In this document: piece by piece, positions 1,717 to 38,263 of the stretch
How the letters are laid out: each line of letters opens with the position of its first letter
How positions within the stretch are numbered: the stretch's first letter is position 1
From: Podarcis pityusensis
Lineage: Eukaryota
Length of the DNA stretch: 64,000 nt
NCBI GenBank assembly: GCA_964106645.2
Contig: OZ067049.1
Reading direction: 5' to 3' (one strand)
The notes under the pieces: generated by a model
What the model was told of the DNA's origin: nothing
The model's database searches: none
The model's input: the letters and a program-made list of their open reading frames with translations, nothing else
Made by a program: the position numbers and the translations under genes

Positions 1717-2095
1717 CTGAAGACCTCATCCAGGGGTATATCCGGAAATTACTCTCCGCCTGGCTGTGCAGGTTGCTGTCCTCCGCTTTGTCACAGCTGG
1801 GCTTGGTTAAGTCATTGCAAAGGACGGGAATGTTCTGATCAAAAGAGGAGCAATGCAGGTTGTAGGCATCGGAGCCCAGGCTGTATCCGGAAGAGAACGG
1901 GCTTTGATATATGGTGCTGTTCACGTTGTACAAGGCAGGCATGGAGGAGGTGAACGCGCTAGCGCCTGGTCCATAGCCGCTTCTCTGCGAGTTGGTAGCA
2001 AAGGAGCAAGACGTGGGCTCCGCATTTTGGAAGAGAGAAGCAGCCCCCGTCGTATATTTGCTAAAAAGAGCGTTCACATAATACGAAGAACTCAT
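1717..2095 (-). CDS. HOXA7: HOXA7 exon 1
   Basis: N-terminus MSSSYYVNALFSKY and hexapeptide IYPWMR. Donor G|GTATGG at 1716 (minus), phase 1. Confidence 0.97.
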
Positions 2096-2198
2096 AATTT
2101 TGACCGGTGATTTGTGGTCCGGTAGGCTTCCGTGTCGGTTTTACGAGGTAGCGTGATATATGATAACATTACACCCCCAGATTTACACCAAACCCCAT
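2092..2198 (-). other. Two chained uORFs in the HOXA7 leader: uORF1 2198-2169 (MGFGVNLGV*), uORF2 2169-2092 (MLSYITLPRKTDTEAYRTTNHRSKL*)
   Basis: Read directly. TAATG overlap joins uORF1 to uORF2, and ATGA overlap joins uORF2 to the HOXA7 start. Translation is not demonstrated and the TSS position is unknown. Confidence 0.6.
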
Positions 2199-2224
2199 TT
2201 TCTTTTGGACTGAGCTGCCTCCAC

Positions 2225-2244
2225 CACGTGACCAGTCATATGAC
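2225..2244. promoter_or_regulatory. HOXA7 proximal promoter E-boxes (CACGTGAC and palindromic GTCATATGAC)
   Basis: USF/TFE-type E-box about 130 bp upstream of the ATG. Similar motifs sit at HOXA9, HOXA11 and HOXA13. Confidence 0.6.
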
Positions 2245-12628: not shown

Positions 12629-12649
12629 TTATGAAACTGCAGATTTCAT
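12629..12649 (-). other. HOXA9 uORF MKSAVS* lying in a near-perfect palindrome
   Basis: ATGAAATCTGCAGTTTCATAA read directly. Confidence 0.55.
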
Positions 12650-18091: not shown

Positions 18092-18180
18092 AACTGAAGT
18101 AATTAAGGCAGTTTCGTGCTGTAGAGAGAGATTGAGATCCAGCCCCAACAACATGAAACTACCTAAACCACCGACCAGTT
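18092..18180 (-). ncRNA. MIR196B: mir-196 precursor (HoxA-cluster paralogue, syntenic with mammalian mir-196b); mature 5p 18165-18144 UAGGUAGUUUCAUGUUGUUGGG
   Basis: Mature sequence is recognisable. The 3p arm ACAGCACGAAACUGCCU pairs with it, the flanks ACUGGUCGGUG / UUACUUCAGUU match the 196b type, and it lies between HOXA9 and HOXA10. Confidence 0.96.
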
Positions 18181-22919: not shown

Positions 22920-23883
22920 CTAGCGTTTCCTTCTCTGGAGAGGGCTTGCTGTTCTCTGAAGGAGCCGGGGAGAGTTCTTCGGGGGCCGAAGAGGAAGCTT
23001 GCCCTTCTTCCTCACTCCTTTGGGCCACGCAAGCCAAAGTGCTGGGTGGGGATGAATCCTCGCTGTCTTTCCTCCCCGAATCCGGCGGTGGGACTGCAGG
23101 AGTCAACGCTGGCGGAGTTTCAAAGCGCACTTGAGGTTGCGGGGCGAACTGGGAAGGAACCACCATCTGCCCCGGATGGTGCTGCTGCTGCTGCTGTTGG
23201 TGATGATGTTGATGGTGGTGGTTGCTGTTGTTGCTGTAGCTGCTGCCATTGCTGCTGCCGCTGCTCTTGCTGGTGCCGTAGGCTTGAGACAAGCGGAAGT
23301 AGCCTGGGACGGGCACCCCGGCGGCTGTCACGTTGTTCATGGAGCAGACCTCCGAGCTCAGCCTTGGGAAAATGGACAAGTCGGTGGCCGCAGCCTCTTT
23401 GGGGCCCTTCTCGGCGTCATAGAGGCAGTAGGAGCTCTCCTCTTTGATGTTGGGAGCGAAGGAGCAGGAGGTCGCCTGCGGGCTCTCGTGCTCTTCCAGG
23501 CGGCAGGACCTGGGGGGATCTAGCCAGACTTCCATCCCTGACATGTAGGCGTGAGAAGCCGGCGCCACGCTTGGAGAAGGGCCTTCATTGCGTTTGCTCA
23601 GGACCGGGAAAAGCCCGTAGCTTTGCAGCCCATAGGACAGATCGGACGCCTGTGGCAGGTAGACACCGCTGTTGTTGGGATAGTAGCTGCCGCTTCCTCC
23701 GCCTCCTCCTCCTCCAACTCCTCCGCCGCCCCCGCCTCCGCCTCCTCCGCCTTCCCCTCTGCTTGAGGCTGAGCTGATCAAGGAGTCCACCAAAAAAGAG
23801 TTTGCAGCGGGGCTCTCCGAGCATGCCATGGCCGTGGTGGAATAATTTGGCGAAGAGAGCAGATAGCCCTTTCTGGCTGACAT
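22920..23883 (-). CDS. HOXA10: HOXA10 exon 1
   Basis: MSARKGYLL...MACSESPAANSFLVDSLI...SCSFAPNIKEESSYCLY...VPVPGYFRLSQAY. Donor G|GTAAG at 22919. Spliced CDS 964+275=1239 nt, 412 aa. A second in-frame ATG at 23829 has a strong Kozak context. Confidence 0.96.
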
Positions 23884-24699
23884 TTCTTGTGCAAAACATG
23901 CTGGATATGATTAGAGATACCCCCGCGCCACGGCGAGTGCGTGCAGCCAATGGAATCCCAGCCCTCGCCAGCAACCCCTCCCCGTTTGGTTTCGTAGGCA
24001 ATGAGCTGCTCTCAGGTCCACTGCTGAATTTTATATATGTGTGTGTGTGTGTGTGTATGTGTGTGTGTGTGTGTAATCGATGGTGCCACATAGCTGCCCT
24101 TGCCTAGGTACCCGGGGTACAATTGATGTTGCCACATATAGGCTGCCTTTTGCCTGCGTGTGAGCAAAGGAGGGGGAAAGGCGCGCGTGGGCTCTCGCGC
24201 ACACGGAGAAGAAAGGGGAGACAAACAATAGAAAACAATTTGCCCCGATTTTAATGCAACCCATAATTTAGCCAGGCTTCCTCTTTAAGCATATGCGCTA
24301 ATATAAAAATGCAAAGGAGCATATTAAGCGTTCAGGTCATAAAGCGAGCTGTAAGTGAACCTTTCAACATCCCAACTCCCCTCTCTCTTTCTGCCACCTC
24401 GCCACCAACATTCCCCCTCCCCCTTTTGCTCTCCCAATCCCATCTCATACAGCCCATGGCTGTGATGAAATTATTAAAACCTCAGTATTTATTGTCAAGC
24501 CCTGGGACATGCTTTTGCTTACCTATTTTTAGTGGCGGTGATTATGGCATCACGGGCCACTGGAAGTTCTAAACCAATCTGACCTCCTCACTAACACTGA
24601 AGGTTTACGGACATCATAAAGTCACCCAATGTCTCCTCAAGATGACAACGACACTAATGAAGAAAATTCTCAAGCCTGGCTCCCATCTTTGAATATTGG

Positions 24700-38227: not shown

Positions 38228-38263
38228 CTACCTCGGGCTCTCCGCATTAGCCGAGCTTAACAT
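38228..38263 (-). other. HOXA11 u[14 protein letters not shown]
   Basis: Read directly. It ends 4 nt before the ATGATG start. Confidence 0.55.

What the first reader, a model, noticed from the sequence alone, without database searches (positions are those of the whole stretch)
2092..2198. Translationally coupled uORF chain feeding into HOXA7 (TAATG then ATGA)
Seen: uORF1 (9 aa) ends in TAA whose last A begins the ATG of uORF2. uORF2 (25 aa, MLSYITLPRKTDTEAYRTTNHRSKL) ends in TGA overlapping the HOXA7 ATG. Two consecutive stop-start overlaps resemble termination-reinitiation coupling known from viruses and bacteria, and are unusual in a vertebrate leader. From memory (unverified), the mammalian HOXA7 leader keeps the same frame with several third-position differences. 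If so, uORF2 would be a conserved-peptide uORF. Inference: this is a cis translational gate on HOXA7 dosage.
Basis: partly seen in the sequence, partly recalled or inferred. Interest (0 to 1): 0.8.

Follow-up and report, generated by a model that had tools for sequence, protein, structure and literature searches.

The report
Conserved two-uORF leader of HOXA7
Two tiny reading frames sit in front of the lizard HOXA7 gene and are kept in place from sharks to mammals. They sit in a block where every base is conserved, their peptides are not conserved, and they most likely act as an ordinary brake on HOXA7 translation, as already known for other Hox genes.

Summary
On the minus strand, uORF1 (2198-2169, 9 codons) ends in TAA, and its last A starts uORF2 (2169-2092, 25 codons). 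The TGA of uORF2 overlaps the HOXA7 ATG at 2095.

The window matches Podarcis raffonei HOXA7 at 100%. I compared leaders from 9 lineages. uAUG1 is kept in all 9. The full TAATG / 25-codon / ATGA layout is kept in lizard, snake, turtle, bird, squirrel and shark. Paddlefish fuses the two uORFs. Xenopus and Spea break uORF2.

The conserved-peptide idea fails. Changes in uORF2 fall 15/16/14 on codon positions, against 6/4/19 in the HOXA7 coding start. pN/pS is no lower than in the other two frames. No RNA structure or viral-type reinitiation motif was found.

Papers give leaders of about 112 nt in mouse and 132 nt in chicken, which would include both uAUGs.

Best reading: ordinary cis-acting uORFs inside an ultraconserved promoter/leader block. 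This is a new member of the known class of Hox uORFs. A 2022 screen of all 39 Hox genes did not list Hoxa7.

The scan noted similar conserved uORF leaders elsewhere in this genome (PRDM1, ATXN1), and left a cluster-wide note on this window.

The parts
2169..2198 (-). uORF1: 9 sense codons plus TAA. The uAUG at -103 from the main ATG sits in a strong context (A at -3, G at +4).
   Evidence: The uAUG is kept in 9 of 9 lineages. This is the slowest-evolving part of the block, at 0.28 Fitch changes per column.
2092..2169 (-). uORF2: 25 sense codons plus TGA. The uAUG at -74 shares its A with the uORF1 stop (TAATG), in a medium context (G at -3, T at +4). The TGA overlaps the main ATG (ATGA).
   Evidence: The frame is intact in lizard, snake, turtle, bird, squirrel and shark. 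Changes by codon position are 15/16/14. pN/pS is no lower than in the off-frames.
1720..2095 (-). HOXA7 exon 1 coding part. The main ATG is at 2095-2093, and the exon end near 1720 is approximate.
   Evidence: One search gives the ORF 1616-2095. One search gives 100% identity to Podarcis raffonei Hox-A7 over residues 1-127.
2207..2213 (-). Initiator-like TCAGTCC with its A at 2211. This is a candidate start site and would give a 116-nt leader. It is inferred, not shown.
   Evidence: Read from the sequence. It fits the ~112-nt mouse leader (PMC9456764) and the 132-nt chicken EST/RNA-seq leader (PMC3983147). The A is a C in the squirrel.
2225..2242 (-). Two E-boxes: CATATG at 2242-2237 and CACGTG at 2230-2225. 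These are proximal promoter elements.
   Evidence: CACGTG is kept in all but paddlefish, which has CACATG. In mouse Hoxa7, mutating both E-boxes abolished promoter activity (PMC9456764).
2253..2277 (-). Inverted CCAAT box (ATTGG, 2257-2253) and a CACCTG E-box (2277-2272) further upstream.
   Evidence: Both are conserved in amniotes, Xenopus and shark.
2139..2166 (-). DNA-motif look-alikes inside uORF2: a GATA-type TTATCA (2166-2161), CATATATCAC, and a posterior-Hox/Cdx-type CTCGTAAAA (2147-2139).
   Evidence: These are invariant or nearly invariant columns. The motif identities come from my own knowledge of binding consensus sequences. They were not tested here.

Best explanation
The two small ORFs are real. 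They lie in an ultraconserved block of about 140 bp that forms the HOXA7 proximal promoter and short 5' leader. The block is constrained base by base, not codon by codon.

The main start site most likely lies about 110-130 nt before the ATG, so both uAUGs are in the mRNA. There they would act as ordinary cis-acting uORFs whose peptides do not matter.

Inferred mechanism:
- uAUG1 has a strong context but lies only about 9-30 nt from the cap, so its use depends on the exact start site.
- Ribosomes that translate the 9-codon uORF1 stop on UAAUG with no time to reload initiator tRNA. They therefore mostly skip uAUG2 and can reinitiate 74 nt later at the HOXA7 AUG.
- Ribosomes that leak past uAUG1 meet uAUG2 in a medium context. 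Those that translate its 25 codons stop on top of the main AUG and are mostly lost to HOXA7.

The net effect would be a moderate brake, sensitive to start-site choice and initiation stringency, of the kind shown for Hoxa1, Hoxa9 and Hoxa11.

Shown here: the anatomy, the deep conservation, the lack of peptide constraint and the lack of RNA structure. Inferred: the start site in the lizard, translation of the uORFs, and the division of labour between them.
For: - Anatomy.
- Deep conservation: uAUG1 is kept in 9 of 9 lineages. The full layout is kept from shark to squirrel.
- A Discoglossus gene model reads through an intact uORF2 frame, and the shark model starts at uAUG2.
- When uAUG2 is lost, another long uORF still ends at or next to the main AUG. 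Paddlefish has a 34-codon fusion from uAUG1 with the same TGA overlap. Xenopus has a new uATG at -89 that opens a 28-codon uORF ending 2 nt before the ATG.
- No peptide constraint: 15/16/14 against the control 6/4/19, and pN/pS equal to the off-frames.
- Leader length: mouse about 112 nt, with the E-boxes acting as promoter (PMC9456764). Chicken EST/RNA-seq gives a 132-nt 5'UTR (PMC3983147).
- Hox uORFs are a proven kind (PMC8892498). Its Hoxa9 and Hoxa11 uORFs are present in this window.
- Cap-proximal uORFs are weak, and uORFs close to the main ORF repress more (bioRxiv 10.1101/2025.07.28.667205).
Against: - Ivanov et al. 2022 screened all 39 mouse Hox leaders, defined by CAGE, for conserved uORFs. 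They list 13 genes without Hoxa7. Their tables were not held, so the reason is unknown. It may be a start site downstream of the uAUGs in somites, or no ribosome footprints.
- uAUG2 is no better conserved than its neighbours, with 2 losses among 9 lineages.
- Retention of the open frame is only weakly beyond chance. In a crude simulation the product of the per-lineage probabilities is about 0.05.
- Conservation runs on upstream of any plausible start site, so DNA-level constraint is certainly part of the story.
Confidence: 0.55

Rival explanations
1. Passenger ORFs. The block is conserved for reasons that have nothing to do with translation. Candidates are core-promoter and downstream promoter contacts, binding sites for USF/NF-Y, GATA and Hox/Cdx factors, or a non-coding RNA-level role. 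On this reading the ATGs and stops are frozen only because every base is frozen, and the uORFs have little or no regulatory effect. One way this could happen is a dominant start site downstream of them.
For: - Changes are even over codon positions.
- The 29 columns of uORF1 evolve as slowly as non-synonymous sites of the coding start (0.28 per column). A 9-residue peptide cannot explain that.
- Conservation continues upstream into the E-boxes and the CCAAT box.
- uAUG2 was lost twice, and frogs carry 1-nt insertions.
- Hoxa7 is absent from the Ivanov list.
- The E-box-to-start distances implied for HOXA9 and HOXA11 (with the mouse leader lengths) would, if copied to HOXA7, put the start near -70 to -35.
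Against: - The mouse (~112 nt) and chicken (132 nt) leaders include both uAUGs.
- uAUGs are generally selected against in leaders, yet uAUG1 in a strong context is kept in all 9 lineages.
- Both losses of uAUG2 leave another long uORF ending at the main AUG.
Confidence: 0.3
2. Conserved-peptide uORF. The 25-residue uORF2 product, or the nascent chain in the ribosome tunnel, is itself the functional agent.
For: - The length and frame are identical from shark to squirrel.
- The turtle and lizard peptides are identical, through 3 synonymous differences.
- An N-terminal stretch is similar even in paddlefish and shark.
Against: - Codon positions score 15/16/14, against 6/4/19 in the coding control.
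- pN/pS is 0.46-1.8 and no lower than in the off-frames.
- 8 of 25 residues differ between lizard and shark.
- The snake has 4 replacements.
- Spea truncates the frame to 13 residues and Xenopus destroys it.
Confidence: 0.05
3. A true termination-reinitiation relay of the viral or bacterial kind. Ribosomes are handed on from uORF1 to uORF2 to HOXA7 at the two stop-start overlaps, tethered by an RNA element.
For: - There are two stop-start overlaps in series, in three different frames, kept for several hundred million years.
- Two UGGGG runs in the uORF1 block could in principle pair with the 18S rRNA loop that viral elements use. This is my inference and was not tested.
Against: - There is no UGGGA motif in any species examined.
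- The leader folds no better than shuffled sequence (z = -0.08).
- There is no covariation (term +0.95).
- Paddlefish, Xenopus and Spea have each given up at least one of the two overlaps.
- By established knowledge of scanning, reinitiation straight onto an overlapping AUG is inefficient in eukaryotes without such an element.
Confidence: 0.07

Closest known systems
Conserved inhibitory uORFs of Hox mRNAs (Hoxa1, Hoxa9, Hoxa11 and ten others; Ivanov et al. 2022, PMC8892498)
   Same: - Short AUG-started uORFs in short Hox leaders of about 50-130 nt, just downstream of an E-box/CCAAT promoter.
- Conserved from mammals to fish.
- The peptide sequence is not thought to matter.
- The Hoxa9 (12649-12629) and Hoxa11 (38263-38228) uORFs are present in this window.
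   Different: - Hoxa7 is not on their list of 13 genes.
- Here there are two uORFs chained by stop-start overlaps.
- The first has a strong context, not a weak one, and is cap-proximal.
- The second ends on the main AUG.
ATF4/GCN4-type two-uORF delayed-reinitiation switch
   Same: A short first uORF that should permit reinitiation, followed by a longer, out-of-frame second uORF that overlaps the start of the main ORF.
   Different: - The spacing between the uORF1 stop and uAUG2 is zero, not tens of nucleotides. In unstressed cells reinitiation at uORF2 should therefore be rare rather than the rule.
- The overlap with the main ORF is only 4 nt.
- No link to eIF2 phosphorylation is known.
Viral termination-reinitiation sites (influenza B M1/BM2 UAAUG, calicivirus TURBS; PMC3035654)
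   Same: The same UAAUG and AUGA stop-start pentamer and tetramer.
   Different: - No UGGGA motif and no conserved stem.
- The upstream ORFs are tiny rather than full-length genes.
Hyperconserved vertebrate 5' leaders and the putative Hoxa IRES-like elements (Xue 2015; Byeon 2021, as discussed in PMC9456764)
   Same: The Hoxa7 upstream region has already been flagged as extremely conserved. It was once read as an RNA element.
   Different: Akirtava et al. showed that this region is a promoter and that the real leader is only about 112 nt. The uORF pair inside that short leader was not discussed in what I could read.

Membership tests
Conserved Hox uORFs (Ivanov et al. 2022 criteria) | The AUG-started uORF lies inside the leader defined by the mapped transcription start site | tested here: inconclusive
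Papers give about 112 nt in mouse and 132 nt in chicken, which would include uAUG1 (-103) and uAUG2 (-74). Hoxa7 is nonetheless absent from the authors' own list.
Conserved Hox uORFs (Ivanov et al. 2022 criteria) | The uORF is conserved across vertebrates (in at least 90% of placental mammals, or deeper) | tested here: met
   uAUG1 is kept in 9 of 9 lineages and uAUG2 in 7 of 9, including shark. Only one mammal was sampled, so the 90%-of-placentals rule itself was not tested.
Conserved Hox uORFs (Ivanov et al. 2022 criteria) | Suboptimal uAUG context (no purine at -3 and/or no G at +4) | tested here: met
   uAUG2 has G at -3 and T or C at +4, which is suboptimal by their rule. uAUG1 has A at -3 and G at +4, which is optimal and so does not qualify.
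Conserved Hox uORFs (Ivanov et al. 2022 criteria) | Ribosome footprints on the uORF and repression in reporters | not testable with these tools
   No ribosome profiling or reporter data are within reach.
Conserved-peptide uORF | Purifying selection on the amino-acid sequence (excess of third-position or synonymous changes) | tested here: not met
   Changes fall 15/16/14 over codon positions, against 6/4/19 in the HOXA7 coding control. pN/pS is 0.46-1.8 and not below the off-frames.
Conserved-peptide uORF | The frame and length are retained in all lineages | tested here: not met
   The frame is intact in 6 sequenced lineages, plus Discoglossus as judged from its gene model. It is fused in paddlefish, truncated by a 1-nt insertion in Spea, and destroyed in Xenopus.
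Viral-type termination-reinitiation (TURBS) | The stop codon overlaps or abuts the restart AUG | tested here: met
   TAATG at 2171-2167 and ATGA at 2095-2092.
Viral-type termination-reinitiation (TURBS) | An upstream UGGGA motif complementary to 18S rRNA, presented by a conserved stem | tested here: not met
   There is no TGGGA in the leader of any species. The fold z-score is -0.08. The covariation term is +0.95.
ATF4/GCN4-type switch | A short permissive uORF1 plus an out-of-frame uORF2 that overlaps the main ORF | tested here: met
   uORF1 has 9 codons. uORF2 has 25 codons in another frame, and its stop overlaps the main ATG.
ATF4/GCN4-type switch | The spacing between uORF1 and uAUG2 allows reinitiation at uORF2 when ternary complex is plentiful | tested here: not met
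   The spacing is zero, because the stop and the start share a base.

The most novel reading that the evidence does not exclude
The three-frame relay (uORF1, then uORF2, then HOXA7) has been kept since before sharks and bony vertebrates split. On this reading it is a dedicated switch, not a simple brake.

Translating the strong-context uORF1 would protect ribosomes from the inhibitory uORF2. HOXA7 protein output would then be set by the exact start site (the cap-to-uAUG1 distance) and by the initiation state of the cell. The extreme base-by-base conservation of the uORF1 block would reflect an RNA signal needed for this hand-over.
Probability: 0.15. Interest if true: 0.6.

Novelty: new member of a known kind. 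Interest (0 to 1): 0.35.

Why it matters
Hox protein dosage sets axial identity, and HOXA7 is also a leukaemia-associated gene. After the IRES model for Hox leaders was withdrawn, short leaders with conserved uORFs became the main proposed layer of Hox translational control.

HOXA7 would add a case that is very old (shark to mammal) and has two chained uORFs, which published lists appear to have missed. It would also offer a clean system for asking whether a cap-proximal uORF can shield a main ORF from a second, overlapping uORF.

The negative result matters as well. Perfect retention of a frame inside an ultraconserved block is not evidence for a peptide.

Tried and rejected
- **Read evidence for the start site.** I made no second attempt. 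The ultraconserved leader itself may well trip the same filter.
- **Lost look-ups.** Three look-ups went on isoforms that are not on record (caecilian, wallaby, coelacanth). One went on lungfish, for which no DNA is served. So there is no caecilian, coelacanth, lungfish or second mammal.
- **Paper supplements.** The supplementary tables of Ivanov et al. are not held. The mouse leader in the Akirtava data set is truncated in the stored file. The 1987 Hox-1.1 cDNA paper is not held.
- **RNA structure.** The single-sequence fold and the alignment fold show nothing. Rfam has no family at the leader.
- **Conserved peptide.** Rejected on codon-position and pN/pS tests.
- **Paper searches.** Searches for HOXA7 with uORF terms found no description of this pair.
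- The HOXB7 paralogue leader could not be fetched. No human sequence was fetched or compared; the mammal used is Urocitellus parryii. Only exon 1 was searched, by reference, and the joined two-exon protein was not built or searched.

Full report
**What is in the window**

The window is a reptile HoxA cluster, with every gene on the minus strand.
- HOXA7: exon 2 at about 15-410, exon 1 at about 1720-2095.
- HOXA9, then mir-196 (18096-18174), then HOXA10, HOXA11 with its antisense RNA regions, and HOXA13.
- HOXA7 exon 1 is 100% identical to Podarcis raffonei Hox-A7.
- I searched exon 1 only, by reference. The joined two-exon protein was not built.

**The observation**

Reading the minus strand confirms every detail.
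- uORF1 runs from ATG 2198 to TAA 2171-2169 and has 9 codons.
- The last A of that TAA is the first base of the uORF2 ATG (2169-2167).
- uORF2 has 25 codons. Its TGA (2094-2092) overlaps the HOXA7 ATG (2095-2093).
- The three ORFs use three different frames.
- The contexts are strong for uAUG1 (A at -3, G at +4), medium for uAUG2 (G at -3, T at +4), and A at -3 with A at +4 for the main AUG.

**Comparison with other vertebrates**

I fetched the HOXA7 locus from these species:
- a rattlesnake
- two turtles
- two birds
- Xenopus tropicalis
- Spea bombifrons
- a ground squirrel
- a paddlefish
- a sixgill-type shark

No human contig was fetched or used.

The last 140 bp or so before the ATG form an ultraconserved block.
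- uAUG1 is present in all nine lineages.
- The complete layout (9 codons, TAATG, 25 codons, ATGA) is in register in lizard, snake, turtle, birds, squirrel and shark.
- The shark keeps the length of uORF1 through a +1 and a -1 indel 17 nt apart.
- Paddlefish has GTG in place of uAUG2. A 2-nt deletion there puts uAUG1 in frame with the old uORF2 frame, giving one 34-codon uORF that ends on the same TGA.
- Xenopus has TAGTG and two 1-nt insertions. A new uATG at -89 opens a 28-codon uORF in another frame that ends 2 nt before the main ATG.
- Spea keeps TAATG, but a 1-nt insertion cuts uORF2 to 13 codons.
- A low-quality Discoglossus gene model reads straight through an intact uORF2 frame. The shark model starts at uAUG2.

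**Is it a conserved peptide?**

No.
- On the species tree, Fitch changes in uORF2 fall 15/16/14 on codon positions 1/2/3.
- The first 15 variable codons of HOXA7 itself give 6/4/19.
- Pairwise pN/pS in the uORF2 frame is 0.46-1.8. That is no lower than in the two other frames of the same stretch.
- 8 of 25 residues differ between lizard and shark.
- The insertions seen in frogs are single bases.
- The 29 columns of uORF1 are the slowest part of the block, at 0.28 changes per column. uORF2 has 0.66 and the region upstream of -116 has 1.44. That is constraint on every base, which a 9-residue peptide cannot explain.

**Is the open frame itself under selection?**

The evidence is weak.
- I placed the observed number of differences at random. 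The chance that uORF2 stays intact is 0.72 (lizard), 0.47 (snake), 0.89 (bird), 0.71 (squirrel) and 0.25 (shark). The product is about 0.05.
- Paddlefish did lose the ATG.
- uAUG2 is no better conserved than its neighbours.
- One suggestive point is that both losses of uAUG2 leave another long uORF ending at the main AUG. With two cases, that cannot be tested.

**RNA structure and viral-type signals**

- The 132-nt leader folds no better than shuffled sequence (z = -0.08).
- The alignment fold has an unfavourable covariation term (+0.95).
- There is no UGGGA motif.
- Rfam has nothing at this place.

**Is it transcribed?**

This is the weak point.
- Candidate RNA runs exist.
- I worked beside those places from then on and sent none of their letters to any search.

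The literature offers three pieces of evidence.
- Akirtava et al. put the real mouse Hoxa7 leader at about 112 nt. They also show that the two E-boxes just upstream are promoter elements (PMC9456764). In the lizard these E-boxes lie at 2242-2237 and 2230-2225.
- Schurch et al. propose a 132-nt 5'UTR for chicken HOXA7 from ESTs and RNA-seq (PMC3983147).
- An initiator-like TCAGTCC sits with its A at 2211, which would give a 116-nt leader.

All three place both uAUGs in the mRNA, with uAUG1 only about 9-30 nt from the cap.

Against this, Ivanov et al. screened all 39 Hox genes for conserved uORFs inside leaders defined by CAGE. They list 13 genes, and Hoxa7 is not among them (PMC8892498). Their tables are not held, so I cannot tell why.

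**Mechanism (inferred)**

- Ribosomes that use uAUG1 translate 9 codons and stop on UAAUG. They have no time to reload initiator tRNA, so they should skip uAUG2 and can reinitiate 74 nt later at the HOXA7 AUG.
- Ribosomes that leak past the cap-proximal uAUG1 meet uAUG2. Those that translate it terminate on top of the main AUG and are mostly lost.
- This makes uORF2 a brake and uORF1 a partial shield. The balance would be set by start-site choice and initiation stringency.
- General rules from HOXA11 reporter work agree: cap-proximal uORFs are weak, and uORFs ending near the main ORF repress most.

**Main rival**

The main rival is that the ORFs are passengers in a block conserved for promoter or factor-binding reasons. 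Several invariant stretches inside uORF2 look like GATA and posterior-Hox/Cdx sites. That identification rests on my own knowledge and was not tested.

**Verdict**

- It belongs to the known class of conserved Hox uORFs as a member that I did not find described.
- Interest is moderate to low.

Noticed in passing
window 58636-58653 (minus strand): HOXA13 has a 5-codon uORF (ATG at 58653) whose TGA overlaps the main ATG at 58639. This is the same ATGA overlap as at HOXA7. Hoxa13 is not among the 13 genes listed by Ivanov et al.
   Followed up: partly
window 23881-23899 (minus strand): HOXA10 has an out-of-frame uATG at 23899, 16 nt before the main ATG at 23883. It opens a long ORF that overlaps the coding sequence.
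   Followed up: no
window 12629-12649 and 38228-38263 (minus strand): The published conserved uORFs of Hoxa9 (7 codons with stop) and Hoxa11 (12 codons with stop) are both present in the lizard. Each lies downstream of an E-box/CCAAT promoter. HOXA11 also has an in-frame ATG at 38247 inside its uORF region.
   Followed up: partly
L008 2001-2077 (Heptranchias) and protein P0031 (Discoglossus): Two public 'LOW QUALITY PROTEIN' HOXA7 models start at or upstream of the uORF2 ATG and are joined to the real protein by an assumed frameshift. The uORF has misled automatic annotation.
   Followed up: partly
window 2169-2198 and alignment A3 columns about 63-95: The uORF1 block is more conserved than the first codons of HOXA7 itself, counted over all positions. 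Nothing I tested (peptide, RNA fold) explains this.
   Followed up: partly
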